IMG/VR virus record: IMGVR_UViG_3300038465_000091
Coordinates: 159,507-223,506 of that record
DNA length: 64,000 bases
Direction: 5' to 3' (one strand)
In this document: positions 41,132 to 55,457 of the stretch, in pieces
Layout: every line of letters starts with the position of its first letter
Position numbering within the stretch: the first letter of the stretch is position 1
Position numbers and translations under genes: made by a program
Notes under the pieces: generated by a model
What the model was told of the DNA's origin: nothing
Seen by the model: the letters and a program-made list of their open reading frames with translations, nothing else
Database searches by the model: none

Positions 41132-41181
41132 GAAACCCCTTAATGAGTTGATGTTCACTAAGGGGTTCAATAGTTGTTTTT

Positions 41182-43695
41182 TTAAGAATGGCTGATCGCT
41201 ACCGCAGCGATGAGGGTCTCATAGCCGAGTGGGTTCGCGAATGATGGTGTCCAAGAGCCGGGTGCTCCCTGAACGCCCCACTCCACAAGGTAGTGAGCTT
41301 CAGAGCCGACCAGCTTACCATTGCTGGCTCTGCTGTAGCCGCCGTTGGTGATGCTGCCGCTTCCGCCGGGAGCCGTGATGACGGTCGTAGCCGTGACGGT
41401 GACCGCTCCGTTACCACCACCCACGGCAAGTGCACGCCCATTGAGGGTGCCGCCGCCGAGAGTGATCGAGGTGTAAGCCAAGATGTCGCCGACCATGTTG
41501 CTGTTGGCAACTGAAGTGAAGGAGCTTCCAACCACCCAGACCACGTTCTGGGCCTGTGCGCCGTTAGCGAGGATGATGGACTGACCGCTCTCAAGCGTTA
41601 CAGTCGATGCCGCGACGAACACAAAGACCGCGTTCGAGTTGCCTTGAGCGTCGAGAGTGATGGAGGTCGGAATGTCCAACGCCCCACCTTTATAGACGCC
41701 AGCGTGGTACACACCTGCCCCACCACCACCGTTGTTGGTGCTGAGGTTGGCAAGACCCGACTGGGTTGCGGTCAGACCGCTGTAGTAGCCAAACGCCGCG
41801 TTACCCGCGAGTCGCGCTGCCGCCGCATCTGCGTTGTCCACGATTGCCGCTGGGGGATTGAAACCAGTGATGGTCATGGTCGGGGCCGAACCGATGTCGC
41901 CGCCCGTTATTGAAGTCGAGGACGAAGCGTTCGTGATCCCGCTGTATGCCAACAGAGCATAGTTAGCAGCCGAACCCAATTCAGCGTTGACAGAGGAACT
42001 GTAGGCTATCAGCGTAGAGTCCGTGCCGAGGCCGAGACCGTTGGCGTTCTTCTGGAGACCTACTACGATGACAAGATCGCCAGTTGGCGGCGAGCCGCTG
42101 CCGGACGTGACTATCGCGGCGGTAACAGCGGGATTAGCCGCCGTGATTGCCGTCTGCGAGAAACTGGCTGGAGAACCACCATCTTCGATTGCCACGCCCG
42201 TCATGCCCGTCCAATCAATCACTTGGAAGTTGATGCCGCCGTCGAATACTGGCTTGCCAGCCGCGAGGTCGAGCGGAGCCGTAATACCGTTCTGATATAC
42301 GGAGTTGAGGTTGACTGGGTAAGAGCCGCCGATTGCCGAGGCGCAGACCCAAACGTAGAGACTTGGGTAATAGCCGTCGATGTTCCAATCCGCTGCTGGC
42401 CATGGGAGGTTAGCAGCGGGAGGAATCGAATACCCGCTGTAGTCCGCGTCCGCGAGGTTGATGCTTGCCACGAGTACCCAGTTGTTTCCTGCGGAAACCG
42501 TTCCCCCACCCGGCGAAGTGACAGCCGTGGCGGTACTGATGCTGATTGCACCAGACGTTACCACGATGCCCGCGAGTGCGCGACCGTTGAGGACGCCGCC
42601 GCCGAGAGTGATGCTGGTGTTGGCGAGAATCGTACCGACCATTGTGCTTGTTGCAACGCTGGTAAAGGAGCTACCGACGATCCAGACTACGTTAGCCGCC
42701 TGCGCCCCGTTGATGAGGGTCACAGCCTGCCCGCTTGCTAGATTTACTGTTGACGCTGATTTGAAGATGAACAGAGCGCCCGAGTTGCCTTGAGCGTCAA
42801 GAACGATGCCCGTGCTCATTGCCATGCTGGAGGTAGCGGAGTAGTTGCCTGCTCGGTAGACGTTACCGCCTGCGATACCCGACGTACTCAGATCGACCAC
42901 GCCGCCGAGTGACGTAAAGGTCAATCCTGAGAAGTAGTTGTACGCCGCGAGAGCGTCAGTTTGAGCCTGCGCTGCGTCTGCGTTGTCAACCACTGCGGGA
43001 GGAACGAGAACCCACGCGCCCGGTGTGATGGTCGTGGTCGGGAATGAGCCGACGTTACCACCCGTGATGACGGACGAGCCCGAGTTCGTGATTCCAGCAG
43101 CCGCCAACAGTACGTAGTTCGCTGCCGACAGTAAGTGCTGGTTGACGACGGGAATCGGGGTGGTGGAGTTGTGGTCCGAGATTGTCGGAGCAGGCGGCAT
43201 GAAGTCGTTCAAGCCCTGAAGGTAACCGAAATTGGGGGACAAGCCGTGAAGCTGATCGAACGGGTCGAGACTCTTGAGGCCGAATGCGATGGCTACAAGT
43301 GTATCGCCAGCCAATGGGCTGACATAGACGTTATCGCCTTGGTCGTTTGCCCACATGTTCGAGACTTTTGAAGCGTACTGCAAAGGTGTGCCCCATCCAA
43401 CAACCAGTTGGACCTGACCAGCGGCAACTACCGCCATGCCATTGCGGTTGTTGAGGACGAGGGTCGTTGCGGAAGATTGGAGGCACAGGAACGTGCCATT
43501 GTTGCTCGCATTGGCGAAACCGCTGACGGTAAAAGCCTGACCTGCGTAGGCTCCGTTCGGCTGTGTTGCCGTGACTGCCCCACCAGTGATGGTTCCAGTG
43601 TAGGTTGTGCTGGCACTTGGCGACCCGGGAAACGGGTAAACTGCATTGCCGACCTGCGTCAATACGAAAACTGGACCGATTGTTGGTACGCCCAT
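41182..43695 (-). CDS. Virion appendage protein with two DUF3494 ice-binding-like domains
   Basis: Two copies of SAANY.LLA..GITN...LDAQGNS.A.F.F...NGAQA.NVVW.VGSS...G.ILA.TSITLGGG.LNGRALA (about 43137-42510 and 41983-41370). Confidence 0.85.
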   Translation of the reverse strand: MGVPTIGPVFVLTQVGNAVYPFPGSPSASTTYTGTITGGAVTATQPNGAYAGQAFTVSGFANASNNGTFLCLQSSATTLVLNNRNGMAVVAAGQVQLVVGWGTPLQYASKVSNMWANDQGDNVYVSPLAGDTLVAIAFGLKSLDPFDQLHGLSPNFGYLQGLNDFMPPAPTISDHNSTTPIPVVNQHLLSAANYVLLAAAGITNSGSSVITGGNVGSFPTTTITPGAWVLVPPAVVDNADAAQAQTDALAAYNYFSGLTFTSLGGVVDLSTSGIAGGNVYRAGNYSATSSMAMSTGIVLDAQGNSGALFIFKSASTVNLASGQAVTLINGAQAANVVWIVGSSFTSVATSTMVGTILANTSITLGGGVLNGRALAGIVVTSGAISISTATAVTSPGGGTVSAGNNWVLVASINLADADYSGYSIPPAANLPWPAADWNIDGYYPSLYVWVCASAIGGSYPVNLNSVYQNGITAPLDLAAGKPVFDGGINFQVIDWTGMTGVAIEDGGSPASFSQTAITAANPAVTAAIVTSGSGSPPTGDLVIVVGLQKNANGLGLGTDSTLIAYSSSVNAELGSAANYALLAYSGITNASSSTSITGGDIGSAPTMTITGFNPPAAIVDNADAAAARLAGNAAFGYYSGLTATQSGLANLSTNNGGGGAGVYHAGVYKGGALDIPTSITLDAQGNSNAVFVFVAASTVTLESGQSIILANGAQAQNVVWVVGSSFTSVANSNMVGDILAYTSITLGGGTLNGRALAVGGGNGAVTVTATTVITAPGGSGSITNGGYSRASNGKLVGSEAHYLVEWGVQGAPGSWTPSFANPLGYETLIAAVAISHS

Positions 43696-43814: not shown

Positions 43815-44333
43815 ATGGCGTTGCTGAGGGGCTATTTATACGTGATCGCTGATAAAGGTCGGCAGTTTGCAAAAATAGGCATGTCACGGGATGTAATTTC
43901 CAGATTCAAGGGATTGCAGACCGCCTGTCCGCTTGATTTGGAGGTGGTGAGTGCCCATCCATGTACGTATGTCCGCTTTCGGGAATTCAAGGCTCATGAA
44001 CAGTTAAAGGATTTGCGCCTTAGAAATGAGTGGTTTAGTTGGGATGAGGTTAGGATAAATACGGCCATTGAGAAGGCTTTGGCGATTCCCGATGAGGTCA
44101 TAAAACCCAGTTTAGAAAAATTGTGGATGTCGAAACCAAACCCAGAACCAGAGGTTAAAGTTAGAGTCCATAGCTACCCTGTAAAACGGGTGGACACTGG
44201 GGAAGTATTTCCCACCGCTCAAGCGGCTGCCGAGGCGGTATTAGGTTCTAAGAGGCTCGCCAAGAAAATCAAGCAAGCGATCAGGGATGGGGCGAAATGC
44301 GGACCCACGTTCTGGGCAAGGGGAGATACATGA
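43815..44333 (+). CDS. GIY-YIG family protein (T5orf172/MUG113-like) with NUMOD1-like tail
   Basis: GYLYVI...AKIGMS...RFKGLQTACP..L...H..L..LRLRNEWF; DTGEVFPT...AAE. Confidence 0.8.
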   Translation: MALLRGYLYVIADKGRQFAKIGMSRDVISRFKGLQTACPLDLEVVSAHPCTYVRFREFKAHEQLKDLRLRNEWFSWDEVRINTAIEKALAIPDEVIKPSLEKLWMSKPNPEPEVKVRVHSYPVKRVDTGEVFPTAQAAAEAVLGSKRLAKKIKQAIRDGAKCGPTFWARGDT

Positions 44334-45040
44334 GCGTAGCACTTATCTTCATCTGCACGGGAGCCAACTATCACAAATACATCGAACCCGCAGTTGCCAG
44401 CGCGAAGAAGTATTTCCTGCCGCAGCAAACAGACATCCTGTTGTTTACGGATAGCGAGCGGCAGTACGACGTGGCGAAACAAGTCCAGTCGCCTCATCTC
44501 GGCTGGCCCAATGTCACGTGGCGCAGGTTTCATACGTTCTTGGGCGAGGAAGTTTGGCTGTCCGAGCATGACTTCCTTTGGTACATGGACGTTGACTCGG
44601 AGATCGTGGCCCCTGTGGGGGAGGAAATCTTTTCCGATGGCATCACCGCCACGGTACACACGTCGTTCATCCTGAGTAAAGGGACGTACTGCACTCCCGA
44701 GGAGAATCCGCGATCCGCCGCCTGCTTGAGCAAGAAAGACATCCGCAAGATGTACACGGGAATGTCCTACGGTGGAACATCTAAAGCTTTCCTCGCGTTG
44801 TGCCGCGAGTGCGCTACGATTGTGGACATCGACACCAAGAATAATTTTGTTCCCATTTGGCACGACGAAAGCGTGCTCAATAAATATCTGTACGACCACC
44901 AACCAGCCAAGGAGCTTGGAGAAGATTACAATGCTTGGAACAGGAAACCCAGCACCAAGGTGTTTCGCGTCCCCAAACCCGGTGCTCCGAATCGTCCTGC
45001 CGTCAACGGAGTTCAGCCGTCCGATCCGAGGAATGCATGA
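44330..45040 (+). CDS. GT6 family glycosyltransferase (ABO-like alpha-1,3-Gal/GalNAc transferase)
   Basis: ICTG.Y..Y......AKKYF...FTD...WP..T..RF...YMDVD...YGG...WHDESVLNKY. Confidence 0.85.
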   Translation: MSVALIFICTGANYHKYIEPAVASAKKYFLPQQTDILLFTDSERQYDVAKQVQSPHLGWPNVTWRRFHTFLGEEVWLSEHDFLWYMDVDSEIVAPVGEEIFSDGITATVHTSFILSKGTYCTPEENPRSAACLSKKDIRKMYTGMSYGGTSKAFLALCRECATIVDIDTKNNFVPIWHDESVLNKYLYDHQPAKELGEDYNAWNRKPSTKVFRVPKPGAPNRPAVNGVQPSDPRNA

Positions 45041-45744
45041 GGGTATTAGTAGCTATTCTCGCCTGCCACAGGTACGTCGCAATAAATGGTCGGGGTTGGG
45101 ATTGGACGAATAGGGATAAGCACCGCCTCATTCCCGTAGACGCGCAGATAGCCGCGTGTCGGGAGACTTGGGTCAAAGGTTTGGCGACGTACCCCAATGT
45201 CGATGTTAGATTCTTTTATGGACGCGGGGCGAACCGTCAGCCGCTAGCCGATGAGGTATTTTTGGATGTCGCGGACGATTACAAAAATCTACCATACAAA
45301 ACGAAAGGTATCTGTGGGTGGGCAAACGGGCATTACGATTTCACATTCAAAACGGACGACGACACCTTTGTTTGGACGAACAACCTCATGAATAGTGGGT
45401 TTGAAGGTTGCGATTACGTGGGCTCCGTCAACGACACCAGACCCCAAAGCCTCTATGCAACGGGGCTGGGGTATTGGTTGAGTGCAAGAGCAGTGAGATT
45501 GGTTGCTGGCGCAATCCCTAATACTGATTTAGAAGACCATTGGGTGGGGTCGGTGCTTCGTAAGTCGGGGATTGTTCCAAAACACGATAAGCGATACGTC
45601 AGTATAGGCAGCAAATTTGTGGGGGTAGATGCGATGCCTCGAAATTCCGAATTCATTGCCGTTCATCCGTGTAGTCCAGATATGATTCATACTTATGATT
45701 TCGAGGAATGTCCTCGGGGTCGTCCTTGGAGCCAAAATGATTAA
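45037..45744 (+). CDS. GT31-like galactosyltransferase
   Basis: RETW...LDVADDYKNLPYKT...FKTDDDTFV...DYVG...GLGYWLS...EDHWVG. Confidence 0.85.
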   Translation: MRVLVAILACHRYVAINGRGWDWTNRDKHRLIPVDAQIAACRETWVKGLATYPNVDVRFFYGRGANRQPLADEVFLDVADDYKNLPYKTKGICGWANGHYDFTFKTDDDTFVWTNNLMNSGFEGCDYVGSVNDTRPQSLYATGLGYWLSARAVRLVAGAIPNTDLEDHWVGSVLRKSGIVPKHDKRYVSIGSKFVGVDAMPRNSEFIAVHPCSPDMIHTYDFEECPRGRPWSQND

Positions 45745-46531
45745 CGTCACGCTAGATGGTGGGTTGGGTAATCAGCTTTTTCAATATGCCCTCGGTCGCA
45801 GATTCGCGGCCAATGGGCATGATGTTACGTTTGACAGAACACGTGTGGTCGATTATGATGGTGCCGCCCACCATAAAACTCGCGCTCAGTATGGTCTAGA
45901 CGGGTTTAATACTACAGTAAAGTTCGGTAGCCCCATAGGTCCGATCTTCAGCGACTACAATTTCCCGGGGGCTTTACCATTTCGACCTGAAGTCTTGAAT
46001 TTGCCCGCTCCCCACACCTTGAGGGGGCATTGGCAGAGTGAGCAATATTTTGCGAATGTGGGTGAGCTTCGTAAGGAATTGACACTCAAGGTCCAACCCA
46101 GTAGTGCCGTTCAAAGTGTCGCGGAACGAATTAAAGCTGGTAACAGCGTGTTCCTGCACGTTCGTCATGGTGATTATCTGATAAAGGAAAACGTGACGTA
46201 CCATGGTCTGATGACCCCCGAATACTACACTCGTGCATTGGGGTTCATCTCAGCCCGTGTAACTGATATCAAGCCCTTCATATTCTCGGACGACCCGGAG
46301 TGGTGCCGACAGAATTTGGCAGGGGAAGTTATAGCTGGGAATAATCAGTTTGAAGACCTGTGGTTGATGAGTTTGTGTCAACACGCCGTCATCGCCAACA
46401 GCACATTTAGCTGGTGGGGTGCGTGGCTAGGTGATACACAAGAGCGCATAGTGGTAGGACCCGCCCAATGGTTTTTGACACCCCATTTAGACGCACGTGA
46501 CATCATCCCGACACGTTGGGTAAAACTATGA
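45737..46531 (+). CDS. GT11 alpha-1,2-fucosyltransferase
   Basis: GGLGNQLFQYA, GHWQSEQYF, HVRHGDY, FSDD, DLWLMSLC.H.VIANSTFSWWGAWL. Confidence 0.92.
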   Translation: MINVTLDGGLGNQLFQYALGRRFAANGHDVTFDRTRVVDYDGAAHHKTRAQYGLDGFNTTVKFGSPIGPIFSDYNFPGALPFRPEVLNLPAPHTLRGHWQSEQYFANVGELRKELTLKVQPSSAVQSVAERIKAGNSVFLHVRHGDYLIKENVTYHGLMTPEYYTRALGFISARVTDIKPFIFSDDPEWCRQNLAGEVIAGNNQFEDLWLMSLCQHAVIANSTFSWWGAWLGDTQERIVVGPAQWFLTPHLDARDIIPTRWVKL

Positions 46532-47439
46532 TGACCGATCTTGTTATAGGGATTGCATCCGGCTATACATGGCATGAGCTTTATCCTTTCGTGGTCAGCC
46601 TACGGCGCTGCGGCTATGAAGGTCGTGCGGTACTCATTATTGGCGACGGACCACATGACGCGGGGCATCCCATTATCTATGAACGTGGTGAGGTGAAAGC
46701 CGACTTGTCCTCCAAGCTGGAGGATCACGGAATCGAGACCATCAACCTCGGAAACTTCCCCGAACATCCGATTCTTGCGAGGTTCCCCACGATTGCCGAC
46801 GCAATAGACAAGTCGAGCGGCTTGCGCTATGCGCTAAGTATGGACACGAAGGACATTGTGTTCCAATACGATCCCACGAAATGGTTGGAACGACATCTCG
46901 GCGACAAACAGATCGCGGTGCAGTCCGAGGAGACGACCTATGCTAAGAGTGAGGGAAACAAAAGAAACTGCATCCTCGCCTTCGGCGAGGAGACGTTCGA
47001 ACGAATGCGAGATGAGGATGTGCTGAATGCGGGGGTCATCTGCGGCACGCCGTCGTGGGTAAGCCGCCTGCACCGCGACATCTACAATCTCACGTTGACC
47101 GACATGCGGATGAAACGTGGCGAGAAAATAGGCTACGAACAGATGATCGCCGACCAGACGGCGCTGAACATTCTGCTTCGGCAGCCGCCCTATTCCGATG
47201 TAACCAAGATAGTTCACAACCACGAGGGTTTTGTTTACGAAGGTTGTCTCTACGGCAGTATTGCCCCCCACACATTGATGACCTCCGAACAAGTCGTCGA
47301 GCTTGCCAGTAGGACGAACTTGAGATGGGACGACGACATGACGATGACCACGAACGATGGCAGCCCGTATGCCGTTGTTCACCAGTATTTCGCCGTGTCT
47401 GAATGGATTCACGGCTTGCGGGGCAAGTTCGAGGGGTGA
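46528..47439 (+). CDS. GT-A fold glycosyltransferase-like protein
   Basis: PFVVSLR..GY.G...MDTKDIVFQYDP...LNAGVICG...DQTALN...VVHQY. Confidence 0.7.
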   Translation: MMTDLVIGIASGYTWHELYPFVVSLRRCGYEGRAVLIIGDGPHDAGHPIIYERGEVKADLSSKLEDHGIETINLGNFPEHPILARFPTIADAIDKSSGLRYALSMDTKDIVFQYDPTKWLERHLGDKQIAVQSEETTYAKSEGNKRNCILAFGEETFERMRDEDVLNAGVICGTPSWVSRLHRDIYNLTLTDMRMKRGEKIGYEQMIADQTALNILLRQPPYSDVTKIVHNHEGFVYEGCLYGSIAPHTLMTSEQVVELASRTNLRWDDDMTMTTNDGSPYAVVHQYFAVSEWIHGLRGKFEG

Positions 47440-47477
47440 GCAAACAAAGAACTTAAGGAACGGTACAGGGTAGAATA

Positions 47478-48737
47478 ATGGATTTGAATAACCCAGAAAT
47501 CAAACGCTGGACAGACAGTGGTACTGCATGTTGGGGCGTAACCGACGAATACAAGGGCGAACTGATCCTTGATTATGCGCGGCGTTTCAACCTGATGACT
47601 TTCGTCGAAACTGGAACATGGCACGGCGGCACCGTGGAGTATGTCAAGCAGCATTTCGACCAGATTCACTCCATAGAACTGTCCCCGGAGCTTGTCGAGA
47701 ATTGCAGAAAAAGATTTTCTGGTTCGCCCAACATCCACTTATATCAGGGTGACAGTGGTGAAAAGATCAAGGAGCTTTTTGGTGGTCTGAAAACTCCGAC
47801 GCTATTCTGGTTGGACGCACACCCGTCAGGCGGTGACACTGTTGGAACCTACAGTCCCTTGGAGAAGGAGCTTACGGCTATTTTTGAGAGCGGCGTCAAA
47901 GGCGTTATCCTGATTGACGACCTACAGGATTGCTGGGAACACAATTGGGCAGAAGTGGCGATGCGGACAGTCGCCAAATACAGCGGTTGGCGGCATGAAA
48001 TAACCCACGGCATCATGAGGATCGTATCCGTAGACGCCAGTGTCATCATCCCCCTGTACAACCTGCAAGACTTCGTGGGGCAAACCATCGAGTCCGCGCT
48101 CAATCAGACTCACCGATTTTTTGAAGTTATCGTCGTCAACGATGGGTCCACAGACGGGAGTCTCAATGTAGCGAAACGCTATGGAGATCGTATCATATTG
48201 ATAGATCAGCAGAACGCTGGATTGAATGCATCGCGTAACGCCGGAGCCAGAGTGTCAACGGGGACTTTCCTACTGCCGTTGGACGCCGACGACTGGATCG
48301 AGCCAACGTACCTTGAAAAGACTATCCCTTTAATGACTGAGGGCATTGGTGTAGTGTCTACCGATATGGACATATTTGGCGAGGTCAGTCGGGCGGACAT
48401 ATCTGGCGAGGTCAATCGGTTGCAGCCTATTGGTAGACCTACTCTCGAAATTCAAAAATGGGCGAACACGATGCCGTGCTGCTCCCTAATACGGCGCACA
48501 GCGTTTAACCAAGCTGGCGGCTATAGCGCCCGCCCAGACATTCAGGCTTACGGAGATTGGAATCTTTGGATTGACATTCTCAAACGCGGTTGGAAAGTCG
48601 CCTCACTAGCGGAACCCTTGTTTCACTATCGTGTGCGCCCGATATCAATGAGTTTAGAAGTATCATCAAAGCACGCTGAACTGGCGAAGGCTATTCGCCG
48701 TAATCACCCCGACCTGTTTAGGCTGGAGGAAAGATGA
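47478..48737 (+). CDS. SAM-methyltransferase-like and GT2 glycosyltransferase fusion
   Basis: FVETGTWHG...SIELS...GDS...FWLDAH...ILIDD, then SVIIPLYN...VVNDGSTD...LDADD. Confidence 0.85.
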   Translation: MDLNNPEIKRWTDSGTACWGVTDEYKGELILDYARRFNLMTFVETGTWHGGTVEYVKQHFDQIHSIELSPELVENCRKRFSGSPNIHLYQGDSGEKIKELFGGLKTPTLFWLDAHPSGGDTVGTYSPLEKELTAIFESGVKGVILIDDLQDCWEHNWAEVAMRTVAKYSGWRHEITHGIMRIVSVDASVIIPLYNLQDFVGQTIESALNQTHRFFEVIVVNDGSTDGSLNVAKRYGDRIILIDQQNAGLNASRNAGARVSTGTFLLPLDADDWIEPTYLEKTIPLMTEGIGVVSTDMDIFGEVSRADISGEVNRLQPIGRPTLEIQKWANTMPCCSLIRRTAFNQAGGYSARPDIQAYGDWNLWIDILKRGWKVASLAEPLFHYRVRPISMSLEVSSKHAELAKAIRRNHPDLFRLEER

Positions 48738-49732
48738 CCAAAATTCTCGTTACTGGCGGTGCTGGCTTTATCGCCAGCCATTTTATTGACCATGTTCTAC
48801 GTACCACGGACTGGCACATTACGGTGCTTGACAAGTTCACCTACGCCTCGAATGGTCTGACTCGGCTAAAAGAGATCGGTGCGTATGATAATCCACGGGT
48901 TAAAATCCACGTCCACGATTGTGCACGACCTTTCGGCTCCTGTTTGGAAAACGAGATCGGTCATATCGACTATCTATTGCACATGGCGGCAGGCACCCAC
49001 GTGGACAATTCCATAGCATGTCCGAGAGATTTCGTCGAAGCGAACATTTTCGGCACCTTCGAGATGCTGGAATACGCTCGCCGCATACCGGGGCTCAAGA
49101 AATTCGTCTACTTCTCCTCGGATGAAGTCTACGGCCCGGCAGCCGTTGGTCAGAAGTTTGAAGAGTGGGACAGATACAACTCTTGCAACCCGTATTCCGC
49201 TACCAAGGCTGGCGGCGAGGAGCTTTCTCTCGCATGGGCTAACACTTACGGGGTGCCCGTAGTCATCACCCACACTATGAATGTGATTGGTGAAAGACAG
49301 CACCCCGAAAAATTCGTGCCGAGGGTTGTTCGTAGCGTGCTTGCGGGCACTGAGATTCAGATACACACAGACCCCAAGACAGGTAAGCCCGGGAGCCGCC
49401 ACTACCTGCATTGCCGAGATGTTTCGGACGCCGTGATGTTCCTGTTGCCTCGCGCTGAAATTCGCCAGAAGTACAACATAGCAGGCGAAGTGGAGATTTC
49501 CAATCTTGAAGTCGCACAAGCGGTAGCCGAAGTTTTGGGTAAAGAACTCAAGTTCAAGCAAGTTAACCCAATCGACGTGAGACCGGGGTTTGATGTGCGC
49601 TATGGGCTTAGTGGCAAGAAGATGGCCGAGATGGGTTGGACGCCCGCTCACAGTTTTCGGGAGAACATCAAGTACCTCGTGGAGTGGATGGTCGCTCCCG
49701 AGAATTCTCACTGGCTGAAAGTCGGGGATTAA
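48734..49732 (+). CDS. rfbB: dTDP-glucose 4,6-dehydratase-like SDR enzyme
   Basis: VTGGAGFIASHF, LDKFTYA, HMAAGTHVDNSI, SSDEVYG, PYSATKA, QHPEKFVP. Confidence 0.8.
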   Translation: MTKILVTGGAGFIASHFIDHVLRTTDWHITVLDKFTYASNGLTRLKEIGAYDNPRVKIHVHDCARPFGSCLENEIGHIDYLLHMAAGTHVDNSIACPRDFVEANIFGTFEMLEYARRIPGLKKFVYFSSDEVYGPAAVGQKFEEWDRYNSCNPYSATKAGGEELSLAWANTYGVPVVITHTMNVIGERQHPEKFVPRVVRSVLAGTEIQIHTDPKTGKPGSRHYLHCRDVSDAVMFLLPRAEIRQKYNIAGEVEISNLEVAQAVAEVLGKELKFKQVNPIDVRPGFDVRYGLSGKKMAEMGWTPAHSFRENIKYLVEWMVAPENSHWLKVGD

Positions 49733-49733
49733 C

Positions 49734-50339
49734 ATGAACGAACTCTGCACACTCGGAGCGAAATACAGGACGGATAAACATAACGCCAAAAACTTCCCTG
49801 AAGAAGGCGATCTGACATCCGTCTACCACGGTCTTCTGAAGGACCGTAGGGATGATGTTCGGAAGGTTCTGGAGATCGGGATTGGGCACACCGTGGCGGG
49901 GCGAGAAGGTTGGATGGGAACTATAGACGATTACCACGCCGGGGCTAGCCTGTTCATGTGGGAAGAATATTTCTCCAATGCGGAGATTTTTGCGTTGGAT
50001 ATTGTCACTGAGGCGCTCATCAATCAAGGTCGCATCCGCTCTTTTTGGTGCGACCAGAGCAGTGAAGATTCCCTGCGAAGTATTATGCCCACGCTCGGAA
50101 CTGATTTCGATCTCATTATAGACGACGGTTCTCACCAAGTTGAGCATCAGATTTTGACAGCTAACACCTTCATGCCCCTACTGGGTCCGAGGGGAATCTA
50201 CGTCATCGAAGACATCCACCTGAAAGATAGGGAGATGATAAAGAACGGAATCAAGAATCCGTCCGAGTTTAGGGAAGTTATAGACACGGAAGGTCTCATC
50301 GGCGACCTAATGCTGATCTTTAAGAAGGAGAGTGTATGA
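49734..50339 (+). CDS. Sugar O-methyltransferase-like (class I SAM, MycE/TylE-like)
   Basis: TDK...VLEIGIG...ASL.MWEEYF.NAEIFALDI...CDQS...FDLIIDDGSH...YVIEDI. Confidence 0.8.
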   Translation: MNELCTLGAKYRTDKHNAKNFPEEGDLTSVYHGLLKDRRDDVRKVLEIGIGHTVAGREGWMGTIDDYHAGASLFMWEEYFSNAEIFALDIVTEALINQGRIRSFWCDQSSEDSLRSIMPTLGTDFDLIIDDGSHQVEHQILTANTFMPLLGPRGIYVIEDIHLKDREMIKNGIKNPSEFREVIDTEGLIGDLMLIFKKESV

Positions 50340-51316
50340 GCAACATAATGGTAACAGGCGCAGGCGGTTTCATCGGGCATCATCTGGTCAAGCGGCTGAA
50401 GGCAGAGGGACACTTCGTTCGCGGTATCGACATCAAGTACCCCGAGTTTGAAAAGACGGCGGCGGACGAGTTCTGGCTTAAGGATTTGCGTTGGGACTAT
50501 AACGCCATCCACGCTTTCAACGGTGAGCCATTCTGTGTTCGCGAGTTCGACGAGGTTTATCAGCTTGCGGCTGACATGGGCGGCATCGGGTACATCACGA
50601 AGTATCTCGCCGACATCGCTCGTAACAACATTCTGATTAACGTCAACATGTTGGAGGCGGCTCGGAGATTTGGCGTCAAGCACTACCTCTACACGTCCTC
50701 GGCCTGCGTGTACAATCAAGACAAGCAGCGAGATGCCAACGTAGTGCCCCTGAGGGAAGAGGATGCTTACCCCGCGCTACCCGAACGCGGCTACGGCTGG
50801 GAGAAATTGTTCGCTGAGCAAATGTGCGAATACTACCAGCACGATTACAACCTCGACATTCGCATGGTGAGATTCCATAACGTCTATGGTCCTCTCGGGA
50901 CATACGACGGCGGTAAAGAGAAGTCCCCCGCAGCCATCTGCCGCAAGGTTGCACTGGCACGGGATGGCGGGGAGATCGAAGTTTGGGGCGATGGGTTGGC
51001 GACCCGTAGCTACATGTACATTGATGACTGTGTGGAGGGACTGAGACGCCTTATGAACTCGGGTTATCAGAAGCCATTAAACCTCGGCACTGATGAGCTT
51101 GTCACGGTAGATGGTCTGGTGGACATTATCAGTGGTGTTGCTGGAAAGACCTTGACCAAGCGCCATGACCTCACCAAGCCGCAGGGTGTGCGCGGACGAA
51201 ACAGCGACAATAATCTGCTTCGCCAGATTCTCGGATGGGAACCGAAGACACTCCTCGCGGATGGATTACGGCCAACATACGAATGGATTAAGGATCAAGT
51301 ATGTCCGAAACTCTAA
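50336..51316 (+). CDS. GDP-mannose 3,5-epimerase-like SDR enzyme
   Basis: GAGGFIG, LAADMGGIGYI, SSACVY, YGWEKL, RFHNVYGP.GT..GGKEKSPAA.CRK, PQGVRGRNSDN are hallmark GME motifs. Confidence 0.85.
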   Translation: MSNIMVTGAGGFIGHHLVKRLKAEGHFVRGIDIKYPEFEKTAADEFWLKDLRWDYNAIHAFNGEPFCVREFDEVYQLAADMGGIGYITKYLADIARNNILINVNMLEAARRFGVKHYLYTSSACVYNQDKQRDANVVPLREEDAYPALPERGYGWEKLFAEQMCEYYQHDYNLDIRMVRFHNVYGPLGTYDGGKEKSPAAICRKVALARDGGEIEVWGDGLATRSYMYIDDCVEGLRRLMNSGYQKPLNLGTDELVTVDGLVDIISGVAGKTLTKRHDLTKPQGVRGRNSDNNLLRQILGWEPKTLLADGLRPTYEWIKDQVCPKL

Positions 51317-53028
51317 TAGCGATAATTACTTGCAAGAAGTACGCCTATCGAGTCCAGATGCAGTTGGACACGTGGGTTCCGCAAGCAATTGCCGCAGGAT
51401 TTGACGTTGAGGTTTTTGACGGCGAGAGGCTAGGTGTCCCCGACGACTACTTGTCCCTGCCGCTTAAGACTAAAGCCCTGTGCAAGTGGGCTGCTGACCG
51501 TGGGTACAAGCGTCTACTAAAGCTTGATGACGACGCCTACATTCGAGTTGCAAATTTTCATACTGTTTTTGATGACTATGCGGGAATTTTCATCTTGAAA
51601 AATGACTGTGGGCTGCGGAACAAGGACATTAAAGATTTCCCAAATGGTACGTGTCCCTTCCCATACGCCAGTGGCGGCGGATACTGGTTGTCCGAACGTT
51701 CCATGAAAATTTTGATAGACGCGCCTTTTTATAGTGATTGGGCCGAAGACAGATGGGTGGGTCAGACGTTGGGGCGGGCAGGAATTTTCGTGACCGTACT
51801 TCCAAACTACTACATGTTCATTCCTTGGGCAAACGCGGCTCACCCACTGGATTATAAAAATACGAAGGAATACACTCATATCCCCATACAGCAAGTGATT
51901 GCCTCGGAAGATTTGATTCTACTCACACAAATCACCAAAGCCGAGGAGTTCAAAGCCCTCCATGCGTGGCAACCTAAAGAACAAGTTGCGGCTGGCTCTC
52001 CCCCAACCCTAAATTCTACGGCATTGATCGTCATAGCCACGGGAGTTGTGTATCAGCACTATGCAAAAGAGCTTATCGCTTCAGCGAAACAGTTCTTTGT
52101 TCCCCATGATGTGTTTCTGTTTACGGATAGTCAAGAGCCTTTTGATGGTGTGAGTGTTCAACTTCACCACGCCCATCTCGGTTATCCTGGATCGACCCTG
52201 ATGAGATACCACGCTATCGTATCGCAGCGTGAAGCTCTCTCCAATTACGACTACATATTCTACGTGGACGCTGACATGAAGTTTCTTTCTACGGTCTCGG
52301 CGGGTGAGGTGTTTTCTGCTGGTATCACCGCGACCGAACACCCCGGATTTATCGGTGGTGGGGGATCGCCTGAGACTAGACCAAAATCTGCGGCTTACGT
52401 TCGAGAACTCAAAGTGTATTATTGTGGCGGATTTAACGGCGGTACTGCTAAGGCATTTTTAGCTATGGCTGAGGAGCTAAAGCGGGGAGTGGATACCGAC
52501 AAAGCCAACGGCATAACAGCGGTCTGGCATGACGAATCTCATCTCAATCGTTTTTTGTTTTATAATCCCCCATCGCGGGTTCTCTCCGTGGAATTTTGTT
52601 GGCCCTCTGTGGAATGGCGATTAACTTCGTACCTTAAAGAATGGCGAAAAGTACGAGGTGAAACGTATGGGCAGGAGCTTGTTCCTAAGTTGATGGCTAT
52701 CGACAAATCGTCAAGGACGGAATACTCAAGTATAAGTCCTCAACCCCCACCCCCGACCCCGCCACCTAATGTGATCGCGGCACGGTGTAACCGTCACAAT
52801 GTGTCGGCTTGCAGTGTATGTATAGCGCACGGTTGGCAATTTCGACAGCCTATCACCCCTGCGCCCACACCGATATCGCCACAAGCCACAACCCCGCCCG
52901 CTCCCCCTCCTCAACCGAATCCGCAAGTGCAGGCGGCAGCGGCGAAGGCTCTTACGGCAACTTTGAAACCAAGTCAAGGGGCTTTGTATCGTAACAGGAA
53001 TGCGGACAATCAGAGGAAGTTGAGATAA
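51301..53028 (+). CDS. GT31-like and GT6 bifunctional glycosyltransferase with Pro-rich tail
   Basis: N-terminus DDYLSLPLKT...KLDDD...GGGYWLS...EDRWVG; C-terminus IATG..Y...FTD...YVDAD...YYCGGFNGG...WHDESHLNRF. Confidence 0.85.
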   Translation: MSETLIAIITCKKYAYRVQMQLDTWVPQAIAAGFDVEVFDGERLGVPDDYLSLPLKTKALCKWAADRGYKRLLKLDDDAYIRVANFHTVFDDYAGIFILKNDCGLRNKDIKDFPNGTCPFPYASGGGYWLSERSMKILIDAPFYSDWAEDRWVGQTLGRAGIFVTVLPNYYMFIPWANAAHPLDYKNTKEYTHIPIQQVIASEDLILLTQITKAEEFKALHAWQPKEQVAAGSPPTLNSTALIVIATGVVYQHYAKELIASAKQFFVPHDVFLFTDSQEPFDGVSVQLHHAHLGYPGSTLMRYHAIVSQREALSNYDYIFYVDADMKFLSTVSAGEVFSAGITATEHPGFIGGGGSPETRPKSAAYVRELKVYYCGGFNGGTAKAFLAMAEELKRGVDTDKANGITAVWHDESHLNRFLFYNPPSRVLSVEFCWPSVEWRLTSYLKEWRKVRGETYGQELVPKLMAIDKSSRTEYSSISPQPPPPTPPPNVIAARCNRHNVSACSVCIAHGWQFRQPITPAPTPISPQATTPPAPPPQPNPQVQAAAAKALTATLKPSQGALYRNRNADNQRKLR

Positions 53029-53492: not shown

Positions 53493-54398
53493 TCAGCCAT
53501 TTTGACCGAATAAATAAACTTGAAGATTCGTAGTGCCGTCTCCACCTTTGACGCACACACGAACGTAGTTGAAGTATAGGCAGGATGGCGACCACATGAC
53601 CGATGTGGGAGAACCAGTGTACGACGCCCCACCCCCAAACAGTCCCGTGACCGTATCGTATGAAATCGCAGCCTCATTGTCCGTACCAGTCACAGCCGCC
53701 ACATTGAGATTGCCAGTAATGTTTGTCCCCCAACTTGGGGTGCCCGTCGTGTTGGCCGCTGGCGGCACGATCAGGTTGTTCTGCCATGCGTACAGCATGA
53801 ATGCCTGATTGACGCTGATCGGGCCTGTGGCGACGGCAAGGTTGCCGAATGTCTGACCTGAGTTAAATGGAGGATTCTGAAGGACATAGGGTCCGCTGTT
53901 GACGCTGACGTACACATTATAGGCTGTGGCGTATCCACCCGCGTCAGGACCGGGGGCCGCGACCGAAATAGTTTTACCTGCGGCGACAGCAAGCGTTGTC
54001 GCTGCGCTGGCTCCCGTTTCGCCCTGAAGATTGACGTAGGTCAGCTTCACCCCGTAAGTAGCTGCTGGATAGGTGAAAGCCTGATCGCCCCCGCCAGCGT
54101 TGGGAGACTGCCCGTGTCCCGCGCTCGTGGGGGTAAATGCGGTGAGAACTGGGGCCGAAGGAGCGGCAATCTGAGTGGCGGCGGTGAGGTTATCGGTTAA
54201 GACATTGGGGTCGTTTGAAACTTCAATCCAAATAGACGCTCCCGATGGAAGAGTTGCTGGTACGCCAGTCGAAGCGTTGCGAGCGGCAACCTGTATCGAT
54301 GAAGCCACAAAGTTCGAGACGTTCCGCCACGGGCTGTTGATTTGGGTCGTACCCGAGGGACAGATAATATTGAGGAGCGTATTGTTGATAGTCTGCAT
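53493..54398 (-). CDS. Putative virion structural protein with an Ig/FN3-like insert
   Basis: AAGGAG RBS; AAPSAPVL...YGVKLTYVN..GET..S...YNVYV inserted between IEVSND and YVRV. Confidence 0.7.
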   Translation of the reverse strand: MQTINNTLLNIICPSGTTQINSPWRNVSNFVASSIQVAARNASTGVPATLPSGASIWIEVSNDPNVLTDNLTAATQIAAPSAPVLTAFTPTSAGHGQSPNAGGGDQAFTYPAATYGVKLTYVNLQGETGASAATTLAVAAGKTISVAAPGPDAGGYATAYNVYVSVNSGPYVLQNPPFNSGQTFGNLAVATGPISVNQAFMLYAWQNNLIVPPAANTTGTPSWGTNITGNLNVAAVTGTDNEAAISYDTVTGLFGGGASYTGSPTSVMWSPSCLYFNYVRVCVKGGDGTTNLQVYLFGQNG

Positions 54399-54513: not shown

Positions 54514-54831
54514 ATGGGCAAGCTTCGTGCGGCGACAACTTTCGGATTAGGGGCTCAAAAATCCGCTGATTCCAGCGTTTTCACGGTTAATCACTTCATT
54601 TCCAGCACCCCCGTACCCCCCGCCCTCAAGCAAAAGATCGCCAGCATGGGACTTGAACGGATAGCTGGCAATATATATGAATCACCGAGCACTCGGGATT
54701 TTTGGAAAGTAAAAGGAAACAGTATCATAAAGCTAGTTGGCGATGAGGTAGACAATGGAGAGTCAATCGCCGCCGCCCCTAAAAACGACCCTATGGGTTT
54801 TATGGGTGCTTTTGACGATATCGAGTTCTAA
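54514..54831 (+). CDS. Conserved-looking hypothetical protein
   Basis: QKSAD, QKIAS.GL.RIA.N.Y.SPST.DFWKV; upstream late-type motif. Confidence 0.7.
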   Translation: MGKLRAATTFGLGAQKSADSSVFTVNHFISSTPVPPALKQKIASMGLERIAGNIYESPSTRDFWKVKGNSIIKLVGDEVDNGESIAAAPKNDPMGFMGAFDDIEF

Positions 54832-54832
54832 C

Positions 54833-55453: not shown

Positions 55454-55457
55454 ACCT

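What the first reader, a model, noticed from the sequence alone, without database searches (positions are those of the whole stretch)
44330..53028. Phage-encoded histo-blood-group-like glycan assembly line
Seen: tightly coupled GT6, GT31, GT11, a GT-A protein, MTase-GT2, a 4,6-dehydratase, an O-methyltransferase, a GDP-Man 3,5-epimerase and a GT31-GT6 fusion. Established: beta-galactosylation, then GT11 alpha-1,2-fucosylation (H antigen), then GT6 alpha-1,3-Gal/GalNAc addition is the ABO logic, also used for the E. coli O86 B-like antigen. Inference: the phage builds methylated A/B-like glycans on its virion (Ser/Thr-rich fibres are adjacent) or on the host surface. No flippase or membrane anchors are visible, which favours cytoplasmic virion glycosylation.
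Basis: partly seen in the sequence, partly recalled or inferred. Interest (0 to 1): 0.78.

Follow-up and report, generated by a model that had tools for sequence, protein, structure and literature searches.

The report
Phage glycan-building gene island
A large soil and permafrost phage carries nine tightly packed genes for building a complex methylated sugar chain that resembles a blood-group antigen, probably with L-galactose in place of fucose. Marine cyanophages carry the same core genes, and nobody yet knows what the sugar chain is attached to.

Summary
Window 44330-53028 holds nine translationally coupled + strand genes:
- GT6
- GT31
- GT11
- a GT-A protein with a GT6-like fold
- a methyltransferase-GT2 fusion
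- an RmlB-type 4,6-dehydratase
- a sugar-type methyltransferase
- a true GDP-mannose 3,5-epimerase (GME)
- a GT31-GT6 fusion

The window is the end of a 223.5-kb, about 71% complete IMG/VR jumbo-phage contig. The phage is related to Tunturiibacter (Acidobacteriota) phage Tunturi 5. Independent peat and permafrost metagenomes hold the island.

The ABO-like family logic is supported, and it is strengthened by linkage. GME-GT11(-GT6) sits side by side in many cultured cyanophages and in 4 of 5 other GME-carrying viral contigs, but in 0 of 80 bacterial GME loci. No GDP-fucose pathway is present, so the GT11 donor is probably GDP-L-galactose. The product would then be an L-Gal analogue of the H antigen, not the H antigen itself.

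The acceptor is unresolved. The absence of a flippase does not discriminate, because soluble glycosyltransferases also build lipid-linked glycans. I favour glycosylation of the phage's own virion proteins (about 0.4) over remodelling of the host envelope (about 0.3).

Two features are new. The island is a hypervariable cassette at a fixed site beside fibre genes. A conserved Pro-rich, Cys-motif, basic C-terminal tail is shared by different glycosyltransferase architectures.

This kind of island is already annotated in cyanophages, so this is a new variant and not a new category.

The parts
39009..40448 (-). Tail-fibre-like protein (479 aa) with an Ice_binding-like (DUF3494) beta-helix domain. 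Ser+Thr content 24%.
   Evidence: PF11999 89 bits; PHROG tail-fibre hits; Ser+Thr rank 3 of 148
40406..41170 (-). GIY-YIG/NUMOD3 homing endonuclease.
   Evidence: phrog_314 E 2e-24; weak PF01541 and PF07460 hits
41182..43695 (-). Fibre-like protein (837 aa) with two Ice_binding-like domains, transcribed divergently from the glycan cluster.
   Evidence: PF11999 207 bits in 2 stretches; homologue beside the island in L003; a metatranscriptome contig ends 8 nt upstream of its ATG
43815..44333 (+). T5orf172/MUG113 (GIY-YIG-like) gene. It is the first gene of the + strand run, and its stop overlaps the GT6 start.
   Evidence: PF13455 49 bits, PF10544 31 bits; ATGA overlap
44330..45040 (+). GT6 glycosyltransferase of the minimal DXD type. 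DVD at 87-89, WHDES at 177-181. A Met sits at the donor-pocket position equivalent to human residue 268.
45037..45744 (+). GT31-like inverting glycosyltransferase (beta-1,3-Gal/GlcNAc-transferase family) with a DDD motif.
   Evidence: PF01762 40.2 bits against a cut-off of 23; motif; no PDB sequence match
45737..46531 (+). GT11 (alpha-1,2-fucosyltransferase family). Motif I reads HVRHGDY. Proposed to use GDP-L-galactose as donor.
   Evidence: PF01531 83 bits; phrog_2644 E 8e-44; motif; linkage to GME
46528..47439 (+). GT-A fold protein with no sequence family and a distant GT6/GT8-like retaining fold. It belongs to a rare phage family (8 clusters found).
47478..48737 (+). Two-domain enzyme. 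Residues 1-180 form a class I SAM methyltransferase (FkbM/CmcI-like). Residues 186-393 form a GT2 with a DAD motif.
48734..49732 (+). RmlB-type NDP-hexose 4,6-dehydratase with SDEVYG and YSATK motifs. Nucleotide specificity is unresolved.
   Evidence: TIGR01181 257 bits (below the cut-off of 365); PDB 2hun E 1e-55
49734..50339 (+). Small class I SAM methyltransferase (Methyltransf_24 type) with a fold like sugar O-methyltransferases.
   Evidence: phrog_21658 E 4e-12; ESM Atlas structure matches include MycE-type enzymes and phage GT fusions; homologues lie beside GT genes in mycobacteriophages
50336..51316 (+). GDP-mannose 3,5-epimerase. [quoted passage not shown]
   Evidence: PDB 2c59/8sg0 E about 1e-93; S122, C124, Y153, K157, N182, K196, R224 and VRGRNSDN all conserved (PMC8787198)
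51301..53028 (+). GT31-GT6 fusion. The N-terminal GT31-like domain has DDD at 76. The GT6 domain (about residues 240-447) has DAD at 323, WHDES at 409, and Gly at the position equivalent to human 268.
52708..53025 (+). C-terminal tail of the fusion: Pro-rich linker, C-x7-C-x2-C-x2-H motif, second Pro-rich linker, basic end (KPSQGALYRN...RK). The same tail is attached to GT2 and GT2-GT2-GT31 enzymes in sister phages.
53493..54398 (-). Conserved all-beta protein of unknown function (301 aa, 20% Ser+Thr) that faces the 3' end of the island. Candidate acceptor or structural protein.
   Evidence: flanks the island in L002, L003, L012 and L114, but also occurs without GT genes in L116; no family or fold found
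54755..55453 (+). GIY-YIG homing-endonuclease-like gene at the right border of the island.
   Evidence: weak PF01541 hit; 100% identical copies in L002 and L012

Best explanation
This is a self-contained, cytoplasmic glycan assembly line of a jumbo phage that probably infects Acidobacteriota.

Shown by sequence:
- There are seven glycosyltransferase catalytic domains: two GT6, two GT31-like, one GT11, one GT2 and one GT6-like GT-A.
- There are two SAM methyltransferase domains.
- There are two nucleotide-sugar enzymes, all soluble and translationally coupled.

Inferred chemistry:
1. [quoted passage not shown]
2. A GT31 enzyme lays down a beta-linked Gal (or GlcNAc/GalNAc).
3. GT11 adds alpha-1,2-L-Gal, the 6-hydroxy analogue of fucose.
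4. A DXD-type GT6 caps the same Gal with alpha-1,3-Gal or GalNAc. This gives an L-galactose analogue of the blood-group A/B determinant.
5. The two GT6 domains have different donor pockets (Met against Gly at the 268-equivalent position), which suggests two different caps.
6. The RmlB-type dehydratase supplies a 4-keto-6-deoxyhexose for a 6-deoxy sugar, completed by host enzymes.
7. GT2 and the GT-A protein add further residues, and the methyltransferases O-methylate them.

Inferred target (least certain): the phage's own virion proteins, namely the adjacent fibre proteins and/or the conserved 301-aa protein. Glycosylation would happen in the cytoplasm before assembly, as in mycobacteriophages, chloroviruses and mimivirus. 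The conserved Pro-rich, Cys-motif, basic tail of the last glycosyltransferase would act as a tether to the acceptor or the assembly. The island is a swappable cassette, so sister phages display different glycans.
For: Enzyme identities and motifs.

Tight coupling of the genes.

GME-GT11 linkage:
- 4 of 5 other GME-carrying IMG/VR loci have GT11 within 10 kb.
- In at least 10 of 18 cyanophage records checked, GT11 starts 120 nt or less downstream of GME.
- S-CAM9 gp071-070-069 is GME-GT11-GT6 with 4-nt overlaps.
- 0 of 80 bacterial GME loci have GT11, GT6 or GT31 within 10 kb.

Donor supply:
- There is no Gmd, Fcl or NDP-sugar pyrophosphorylase, and only two SDR enzymes lie in the contig.
- The sister phage L002 keeps GT6 (94% identity) and GT31 (74%), but has a 40%-identical GT11 together with a true Gmd in place of GME. 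GT11 and its GDP-sugar enzyme appear to be swapped together.

For a non-exported (virion) target:
- No polytopic membrane ORF occurs anywhere in the 223 kb, nor within 10 kb of GME in four other viral loci.
- The island lies in the fibre/virion module. It sits between homologues of Tunturi 5 gp346 and gp348, downstream of the fibre genes.
- It is flanked by fibre genes in the window, L003 and L005.
- The tail module is shared by three GT architectures.
- GT6 and GT11 are rare in the host phylum: 1 and 7 of 301 genomes. The glycan is therefore not a copy of a common host structure.
- MT201 homologues sit next to GT genes in mycobacteriophages.
- The only experimentally established role of multi-GT plus methyltransferase clusters without membrane parts in viruses is virion glycosylation (Freeman et al. 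2023, cited as ref. 80 in PMC12582341; stated from my own knowledge).
- A peat metatranscriptome holds contigs of the fibre gene 5' end and of GT6.
Against: - There is no direct evidence on the acceptor.
- Bacterial O-antigen and LOS glycosyltransferases are also soluble, so lack of membrane parts does not exclude a lipid-linked host acceptor that host MsbA, Wzx or WaaL then export.
- The contig is only about 71% complete, so the missing part could hold more genes.
- Outside the sister group, similar islands sit next to replication genes, a portal gene or a ClpB-like gene, not consistently next to fibres.
- The 301-aa neighbour also occurs without GT genes (L116).
- The docking test between the tail and that protein gave no answer.
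- The MCP has no Ser/Thr-rich C-terminal extension.
- GT11 motif I has His where the second Arg is usual. The other GME-linked GT11s keep Arg-Arg, so no sequence signature for L-Gal use was found.
- Donor and acceptor specificities within GT6, GT11 and GT31 cannot be read reliably from sequence.
- RNA-library contigs could be DNA carry-over.
Confidence: 0.4

Rival explanations
1. Host envelope remodelling. The same enzymes extend a host lipid-linked glycan (lipid A-core/LOS, an Und-PP-linked O-antigen or EPS unit, or an S-layer glycan) at the cytoplasmic face. Host MsbA/Lpt or Wzx/WaaL then exports the altered glycan. The changed cell surface would block superinfection or stop progeny from sticking to infected cells and debris. 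[quoted passage not shown]
For: - The family logic matches Und-PP-based synthesis of the E. coli O86 B-like antigen (general knowledge).
- Soluble glycosyltransferases plus nucleotide-sugar enzymes without a flippase is exactly the content of hypervariable LOS loci.
- Cyanophage papers assign the homologues to host surface modification (PMC9602691, PMC12801897).
- The basic C-terminal tail could be a peripheral membrane anchor, as in the bacterial GT6 BHB domains (PMC3516806).
- The phage GME is closest to GMEs of Acidobacteriota, at 65-68% identity.
- The island lies next to receptor-binding fibre genes, a usual place for surface-conversion morons.
Against: - There is no initiating phosphoglycosyltransferase, flippase, polymerase or ligase in 223 kb.
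- The tail has long Pro-rich linkers and a Cys/His motif but no hydrophobic or amphipathic stretch.
- GT6 and GT11 are almost absent from the host phylum.
- Bacterial GME loci lack these GTs, so no host pathway is evident for the phage to plug into.
- Established surface conversion uses membrane proteins of temperate phages. No case of a multi-step soluble pathway acting on host LPS during infection has been demonstrated (my knowledge).
Confidence: 0.3
2. Loose collection of auxiliary metabolic genes. The genes do not form one pathway. Each enzyme boosts or diverts host nucleotide-sugar and polysaccharide metabolism, or acts on a different acceptor, and the clustering only reflects a recombination hot spot bracketed by homing endonucleases.
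For: - The island is a mosaic. The X7 variant keeps 45530-49299 at 99.4% identity but has a replaced left part.
- Three homing-endonuclease-like genes bracket it.
- Gene content differs greatly among sister phages.
Against: - Start and stop codons overlap by 4 nt along the whole run.
- The GT6-GT31-GT11 order recurs.
- GME-GT11-GT6 adjacency recurs in unrelated phages.
- GT11 and its GDP-sugar enzyme are co-swapped.
- Glycosyltransferase domains are fused to each other and to a methyltransferase.
Confidence: 0.12
3. DNA hypermodification. The glycan is built on a modified base of the phage genome to block restriction, as in the T-even phages.
For: - Phage glycosyltransferases classically act on hydroxymethylated bases.
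- One cyanophage paper raises this possibility for its GTs (PMC12801897).
- A DarB-like antirestriction gene lies 5 kb downstream.
Against: - No thymidylate-synthase-like hydroxymethylase is in the held 223 kb, although the contig is only 71% complete.
- GT6, GT11 and GT31 are known only with sugar acceptors.
- A seven-domain pathway with methylated sugars far exceeds any known DNA glycan.
- Metagenome assemblers and short reads handle this DNA normally, which is a weak argument.
Confidence: 0.04

Closest known systems
Cyanomyophage 'LPS / cell wall synthesis and modification' islands (S-CAM9 gp071-gp069; P-SSM2 PSSM2_260-271; S-SCSM1 ORF121-135)
   Same: - GME (44-50% identity), GT11 (about 34%) and DXD-type GT6 (about 30-38%) sit side by side, often with 4-nt overlaps.
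- A methyltransferase, GT2 enzymes and an SDR enzyme accompany them.
- There are no membrane components.
- The islands lie in a hypervariable genome region and have no experimentally known acceptor (PMC9602691, PMC12801897).
   Different: - The phage lineage differs (MCP related to Tunturi 5 and phage G), as do the host phylum and the habitat (peat and permafrost).
- GT31 enzymes are present here and were not found in the two cyanophage loci checked.
- This island has a GT31-GT6 fusion, a conserved C-terminal tail, an RmlB-type dehydratase and neighbouring fibre genes.
- S-CAM9 carries its own NDP-sugar pyrophosphorylase, which this contig lacks.
E. coli O86 O-antigen (B-like antigen) genes WbnH/I/J/K and Bacteroides ovatus BoGT6a
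   Same: The order of linkages is the same: beta-1,3-Gal, then alpha-1,2-Fuc by a GT11, then alpha-1,3-Gal/GalNAc by a GT6 that needs the 2'-substituted Gal. The GT6 catalytic Glu and acceptor His/Thr/Trp are conserved (PMC3516806).
   Different: - The bacterial GT6 enzymes have NXN and a C-terminal membrane-binding BHB domain. The phage enzymes have DXD and no BHB.
- The bacterial clusters include WecA initiation, Wzx, Wzy and GDP-fucose genes. None of these is present here.
- The likely donor here is GDP-L-Gal.
Mycobacteriophage virion glycosylation (Che8, Corndog, Myrna; Freeman et al. 2023, cited in PMC12582341)
   Same: Phage-encoded soluble glycosyltransferases and O-methyltransferases act in the cytoplasm. 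MT201-type methyltransferases lie next to GT genes in mycobacteriophages.
   Different: - The GT families differ, and no sequence relationship was found among the GTs.
- The acceptor sites there are C-terminal tails of capsid and tail-tube proteins. No such tail is seen on this MCP.
- Glycosylation is untested here.
Chlorovirus PBCV-1 and Mimivirus glycan machinery
   Same: The pathway is virus-encoded and independent of host membranes. It has multi-domain GT and GT-methyltransferase fusions, makes its own nucleotide sugars, and builds methylated rare sugars. Gene content varies from strain to strain.
   Different: These are eukaryotic giant viruses with different enzyme families. The resemblance is one of logic only.

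Membership tests
CAZy GT6 (PF03414), DXD 'phage/Parachlamydia' clade | Family profile match above the curated cut-off | tested here: met
   79.2 and 90.6 bits against a cut-off of 25. NF041524 gave 131 and 133 bits, below its subfamily cut-off of 250.
CAZy GT6 (PF03414), DXD 'phage/Parachlamydia' clade | DXD metal motif (not NXN), catalytic Glu in WHDES, minimal domain without BHB | tested here: met
   DVD 87-89 and DAD 323-325; WHDES at 177 and 409; aligned to BoGT6a N95-A-N97 and E192 (PMC3516806).
CAZy GT6 (PF03414), DXD 'phage/Parachlamydia' clade | Alpha-1,3 transfer of Gal/GalNAc to a 2'-fucosylated (or 2'-L-galactosylated) beta-Gal | not testable with these tools
   Only indirect evidence: the equivalents of His122, Thr134 and Trp189 are conserved.
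CAZy GT11 (PF01531) alpha-1,2-fucosyltransferases | Family profile match | tested here: met
   83.3 bits against a cut-off of 23.9; phrog_2644 E 8e-44.
CAZy GT11 (PF01531) alpha-1,2-fucosyltransferases | Motif I HxRRxD (GDP-sugar binding) | tested here: inconclusive
   The motif is HVRHGDY, with the second Arg replaced by His. Relatives in L002-L006 and S-CAM9 keep Arg-Arg.
CAZy GT11 (PF01531) alpha-1,2-fucosyltransferases | GDP-L-fucose as donor | not testable with these tools
   Context argues for GDP-L-Gal: GME is present and Gmd/Fcl are absent.
CAZy GT31 (PF01762) | Family profile match and DDD/DXD motif | tested here: met
   The stand-alone gene scores 40.2 bits. The fusion N-domain scores 23.6 bits against a cut-off of 23, which is borderline. 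DDD is present in both. No solved relative was found by sequence.
GDP-mannose 3,5-epimerase (GM35E) | Ser/Tyr/Lys triad plus Cys-Lys acid/base pair, acidifying Arg, Asn203 and Arg243 equivalents | tested here: met
   S122, Y153, K157, C124, K196, N182, R224 and VRGRNSDN aligned to At GME 2c59, E 1.9e-93 (residues as defined in PMC8787198).
dTDP-glucose 4,6-dehydratase (RmlB, TIGR01181) | Equivalog score cut-off | tested here: not met
   256.9 bits against a cut-off of 365.1. It is filed only as an RmlB-type NDP-hexose 4,6-dehydratase.
dTDP-glucose 4,6-dehydratase (RmlB, TIGR01181) | Dehydratase Asp-Glu pair ([ST]DEVYG) and YxxxK | tested here: met
   SDEVYG at 129 and YSATK at 154. Best solved relatives are all dTDP-glucose 4,6-dehydratases.
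Wzx/Wzy-type O-antigen or capsule cluster | Initiating phosphoglycosyltransferase, flippase, polymerase (polytopic membrane proteins) | tested here: not met
   No ORF in the 223.5-kb contig has more than 4 hydrophobic segments, and the cluster has none. The contig is about 71% complete.
Cyanophage GME-GT11-GT6 cassette | Adjacent GME, GT11 and DXD-GT6 genes in a phage genome | tested here: met
   All three lie within 8.7 kb here. The same trio is contiguous in S-CAM9. The GME-GT11 gap is 120 nt or less in at least 10 cyanophage records.
Phage virion glycosylation system (mycobacteriophage type) | Glycans covalently attached to capsid or tail proteins | not testable with these tools
   This needs virions. 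The complex prediction of the tail with the 301-aa neighbour gave no answer.
T-even-type DNA glycosylation | Hydroxymethylase (thymidylate-synthase homologue) that makes the acceptor base | tested here: not met
   PF00303 finds nothing in the contig. The contig is incomplete.

The most novel reading that the evidence does not exclude
GME-GT11-GT6 is a phage-specific pathway, found from marine cyanophages to permafrost jumbo phages. It makes an L-galactose version of the blood-group A/B trisaccharide. Here the pathway is extended by GT31, GT2 and methyltransferases, and the glycan is put on the phage's own fibre or surface proteins by enzymes tethered through a conserved docking tail. Sister phages would then wear different, swappable glycan coats. 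This would be the first virion glycosylation system outside actinobacteriophages and the first GT11 L-galactosyltransferase. In a cold-soil phage whose fibres carry ice-binding-like domains, the coat might also protect against freezing.
Probability: 0.2. Interest if true: 0.8.

Novelty: new variant of a known kind. Interest (0 to 1): 0.55.

Why it matters
Phage genomes from oceans and soils carry many 'LPS' or 'glycosyltransferase' auxiliary genes whose acceptor has never been shown.

This island adds three things. It shows that a core trio (GME, GT11, DXD-GT6) travels together in unrelated phages but not in bacteria. It gives a concrete and cheap biochemical prediction: an L-galactose H/A/B analogue and a GT11 that uses GDP-L-Gal. 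It points to mis-annotation, because most cyanophage GMEs are labelled UDP-glucose 4-epimerase.

The hypervariable cassette, fixed between fibre genes, and the shared docking tail offer handles for finding the acceptor. If the acceptor is the virion, phage glycan coats would be far more widespread than the single actinobacteriophage example. That would have consequences for adsorption, stability and immune recognition of phages.

Tried and rejected
1. Near and distant DNA searches of the island against GenBank phages found nothing.
2. A sequence signature for L-Gal-using GT11 was sought. The His in motif I is peculiar to this gene, and other GME-linked GT11s keep Arg-Arg, so no claim is made.
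3. Fold of the 301-aa neighbour:
   - The AlphaFold model was too poor to use (pLDDT 39).
   - A profile of 23 family members found nothing in PDB or Pfam.
   - PHROGs found nothing.
4. The complex prediction of the tail with the 301-aa protein gave no answer.
5. A strict link between the 301-aa protein and GT islands was tested. The link holds in five lineages, but L116 has the protein without GT genes, so it is not obligatory.
6. The tail was searched for elsewhere in the phage. The only match was a chance hit in a tape-measure-like protein.
7. Promoter and terminator scans over the island did no better than shuffled sequence. Two upstream motif classes were found in the genome, but neither lies upstream of the cluster, so its timing class is unknown.
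8. A search for an MCP C-terminal Ser/Thr tail, as in glycosylated mycobacteriophages, found none.
9. Host origin of the whole cluster was tested. Bacterial GME loci lack the GTs, and GT6 and GT11 are rare in Acidobacteriota. Only GME looks host-derived.
10. Tunturi 5 gp300/gp301 'galactosyl transferases' are not close relatives of any cluster protein.

Full report
**What the window is.** The 64-kb window is the last part of a single 223,506-bp contig. The contig is an IMG/VR viral record, linear, with a CheckV completeness of about 71%.
- Its major head protein (window 10983-11942) is 71% identical to that of Tunturiibacter phage Tunturi 5, a 309-kb jumbo myovirus of Acidobacteriota from Arctic tundra. 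It is more distantly related to Bacillus phage G (PMC11924767).
- Near-identical copies of the region lie in contigs of peat, permafrost and soil metagenomes from at least six studies (share of words 0.80-0.97). A permafrost run holds pieces with no differences at all.
- The sequence is therefore a real, widespread phage and not an assembly chimera.

**The observation.** The + strand from 43815 to 53028 carries ten ATG-started genes. Their junctions are 4-, 4-, 8-, 4-, 4-, 4- and 16-nt overlaps and gaps of 38 and 1 nt.
- *GT6 (44330-45040).* It matches PF03414 (79 bits) and the solved Bacteroides ovatus enzyme (E 6e-33). In that alignment the bacterial N-A-N motif is D-V-D here. The catalytic Glu of WHDES and the acceptor-binding His, Thr and Trp are kept. 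By the clade scheme of PMC3516806 this is the minimal, DXD, metal-dependent 'cyanophage/Parachlamydia' type. The one tested member of that type needs a 2'-fucosylated acceptor.
- *GT31 (45037-45744).* It scores 40 bits on PF01762 and has a DDD motif.
- *GT11 (45737-46531).* It scores 83 bits on PF01531. Its motif I reads HVRHGDY.
- *46528-47439.* It has no sequence family. It belongs to a rare family, with only 8 clusters found among 5.8 billion proteins. Its model (pLDDT 77) is a GT-A fold, and the nearest solved structures are the GT6 enzymes (E 1e-9, TM about 0.5).
- *47478-48737.* This is a class I methyltransferase domain fused to a GT2.
- *48734-49732.* This is an RmlB-type 4,6-dehydratase with the Asp-Glu pair and YxxxK. 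It falls below the equivalog cut-off.
- *49734-50339.* This is a small Methyltransf_24-type enzyme whose fold resembles sugar O-methyltransferases.
- *50336-51316.* This is a true GDP-mannose 3,5-epimerase: E about 1e-93 to the plant enzymes, with every residue that PMC8787198 lists as defining the family.
- *51301-53028.* This is a GT31-like domain fused to a second DXD-type GT6.
- None of these proteins has a transmembrane segment.

**Context.**
- Compared with Tunturi 5, the stretch from about 39 to 55 kb is an insertion. It lies between the homologues of gp346 (exonuclease, window 38146-38886) and gp348-350 (window 55365-63773, the last one DarB-like), at the end of the fibre/virion module.
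- Besides the glycan genes, the insertion holds two fibre-like genes on the - strand with Ice_binding-like (DUF3494) beta-helix domains, three GIY-YIG-type homing-endonuclease-like genes, and a conserved 301-aa all-beta protein on the - strand.
- Sister phages in IMG/VR (L002/L016, L003, L012), and a more distant one (L114), have an island at the same site but with very different content.
  - L002 keeps GT6 (94%) and GT31 (74%). It has a 40%-identical GT11, then thiamine-enzyme-like genes, an SDR, an RmlC-like epimerase, a DegT aminotransferase, a true Gmd, a GT10 and a GT2-GT2-GT31 fusion.
  - L012 has DegT, a methyltransferase, GT31-like enzymes and GT2 enzymes.
- A soil metagenome holds a mosaic variant that is 99.4% identical over 45530-49299 but replaced to the left of that.
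- The island is thus a hypervariable cassette at a fixed locus.

**The core chemistry.**
- The whole contig has only these two SDR enzymes. It has no NDP-sugar pyrophosphorylase and no Gmd or Fcl.
- GT11 is the only family in the island that uses a GDP-sugar, and the only GDP-sugar enzyme is GME. GME makes GDP-L-galactose, the 6-hydroxy analogue of GDP-L-fucose.
- Linkage supports this pairing strongly.
  - Four of five other GME-carrying viral loci have GT11 within 10 kb.
  - 37 GenBank phage records, all marine cyanophages, carry a true GME (44-50% identity). In at least 10 of the 18 records I could check, GT11 begins within 120 nt downstream.
  - In S-CAM9, gp071, gp070 and gp069 are GME (SSAC, YGWEK and GGKEK all present), GT11 and GT6, with 4-nt overlaps.
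  - P-SSM2 has GT11, a methyltransferase, GT6 and an SDR in one run.
  - By contrast, none of 80 bacterial GME loci has GT11, GT6 or GT31 within 10 kb. GT11 and GT6 occur in only 7 and 1 of 301 Acidobacteriota genomes.
- In L002 the diverged GT11 comes with Gmd instead of GME, as if glycosyltransferase and donor pathway were exchanged together.
- I therefore read the trio as follows. GT31 makes a beta-Gal (or similar). GT11 adds alpha-1,2-L-Gal. GT6 adds alpha-1,3-Gal/GalNAc.
- The two GT6 domains differ at the positions that separate human A and B transferases: Thr/Met in the stand-alone enzyme and Cys/Gly in the fusion. This suggests two different caps, but it is inference only.
- I looked for a motif that would mark L-Gal-using GT11s and found none.

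**The acceptor.** This is the weak point of every reading.
- No polytopic membrane protein is encoded in the 223 kb, nor near GME in four other viral loci. This fits a cytoplasmic protein target. It fits a host lipid-linked acceptor equally well, because O-antigen and LOS glycosyltransferases are themselves soluble and rely on housekeeping exporters.
- In favour of the phage's own proteins:
  - The island lies in the fibre/virion module, with fibre genes alongside it in three lineages.
  - These GT families are rare in the host phylum.
  - The only demonstrated role of such membrane-free GT-plus-methyltransferase clusters in viruses is virion glycosylation (mycobacteriophages, chloroviruses, mimivirus; my knowledge, with Freeman 2023 cited in PMC12582341).
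  - Relatives of the small methyltransferase lie beside GT genes in mycobacteriophages.
- A new feature may bear on the question. The fusion ends in a tail made of a Pro-rich linker, a C-x7-C-x2-C-x2-H motif, a second Pro-rich linker and a basic end.
  - The same tail, at 57-68% identity, is attached to a GT2-GT2-GT31 enzyme in L002, to the GT31-GT6 fusion in the middle of the L003 island, and, without the Cys motif, to a GT2 in L012.
  - Only four protein clusters with this tail exist in the 5.8-billion-protein collection, and all are glycosyltransferases.
  - It looks like a docking module. It could tether the enzyme to a phage protein or, less convincingly given the lack of any hydrophobic stretch, to the membrane.
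- My attempts to find the partner failed.
  - The complex prediction gave no answer.
  - The 301-aa neighbour could not be modelled or assigned.
  - That protein also occurs without GT genes in one lineage.
- A peat metatranscriptome holds a contig that ends 8 nt upstream of the 837-aa fibre gene's ATG, and a short contig inside GT6. This is compatible with expression in situ but proves neither transcription nor timing.
- DNA as acceptor is unlikely. No hydroxymethylase is present, and these GT families are known only with sugar acceptors.

**Comparison and novelty.**
[quoted passage not shown] GME, alpha-1,2-fucosyltransferase and other GTs have been annotated there and are assumed, without experiment, to alter the host surface (PMC9602691, PMC12801897). 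The GT6 of P-SSM2 has long been noted (PMC3516806).
- The kind is therefore known. What is new here:
  - a different phage lineage, host phylum and habitat;
  - the added GT31 enzymes, which complete the A/B-like logic;
  - the GT31-GT6 fusion and the shared tail;
  - the cassette behaviour at a fixed site next to fibres;
  - the explicit L-galactose hypothesis with its linkage statistics.
- I rate it a new variant of a known kind, of moderate interest. The acceptor question remains open, but simple experiments can now address it.

Noticed in passing
window 39009-40448 (-) and 41182-43695 (-); L003:305-2143 (-): Phage fibre-like proteins carry Ice_binding-like (DUF3494, PF11999) beta-helix domains, two of them in the 837-aa protein. 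The phage is found in peat and permafrost metagenomes. Whether the domain binds ice, glycans or a receptor is unknown.
   Followed up: partly
window 52708-53025: A conserved C-terminal tail (Pro-rich linker, C-x7-C-x2-C-x2-H motif, Pro-rich linker, basic KPSQGALYRN...RK end) is shared by three different glycosyltransferase architectures in sister phages. Only four protein clusters with this tail were found in 5.8 billion.
   Followed up: partly
GenBank cyanophage records (e.g. L112 = S-CAM9 146555-149204): 37 cyanophage records encode a true GDP-mannose 3,5-epimerase. Almost all are annotated as 'UDP-glucose 4-epimerase' or 'nucleotide-sugar epimerase'. GT11 lies immediately downstream in at least 10 of 18 records checked, and GT6 follows in S-CAM9.
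   Followed up: yes
window 40406-41170 (-), 43815-44333 (+), 54755-55453 (+): Three GIY-YIG/T5orf172 homing-endonuclease-like genes bracket the island. The 54755-55453 gene is 100% identical at the protein level in L002 and L012, although its neighbours are only 66-83% identical. This suggests recent spread.
   Followed up: partly
window 43427-45530 against 45530-49299: A soil metagenome contig (run X7) is 99.4% identical over GT11 through the dehydratase. Its fibre 5' end, endonuclease, GT6 and GT31 are replaced or strongly diverged. This shows fine-scale mosaic exchange inside the island.
   Followed up: partly
window 42909-43703 and 44641-44892: A peat metatranscriptome (run X15) holds a 795-nt contig that ends 8 nt upstream of the 837-aa fibre gene's ATG, and a 252-nt contig inside GT6. 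This may be in-situ transcription with a very short leader, but DNA carry-over is not excluded.
   Followed up: partly
window 58086-63773 (+): A 1895-aa protein is homologous to Tunturi 5 gp350, annotated there as a DarB-like antirestriction protein. It has no Pfam match here. It is conserved with its two upstream genes in all sister phages.
   Followed up: no
whole contig; e.g. window 32915 and 37142; window 38886 (-): Two recurring upstream motifs occur: TTTTGGGTATAAT(A/G)GGG before small genes, and (C)AGTATTA 6-22 nt before the starts of other genes. These may be two promoter classes. Neither lies upstream of the glycan cluster.
   Followed up: partly
window 38938-38959: A strong 9-bp GC-rich hairpin with T runs lies just downstream of the 479-aa fibre gene and is a likely terminator of the - strand fibre unit.
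   Followed up: no
L003:9400-10001: In the sister contig L003 the small methyltransferase (92-96% identical) is split over two frames. This is a frameshift or a sequencing error. An extra FkbM-type methyltransferase gene sits between it and the dehydratase.
   Followed up: no
L003:2912-3619: The stand-alone GT6 of sister phage L003 has D-V-C instead of DXD at the metal site, so it may be inactive or altered.
   Followed up: no
L110 (genome G012, contig C142): This is the single GT6 hit among 301 Acidobacteriota genomes. It is 31-38% identical to the phage GT6 domains and has a DAD motif. It was not checked whether it lies in a prophage or in a mis-binned phage contig.
   Followed up: no
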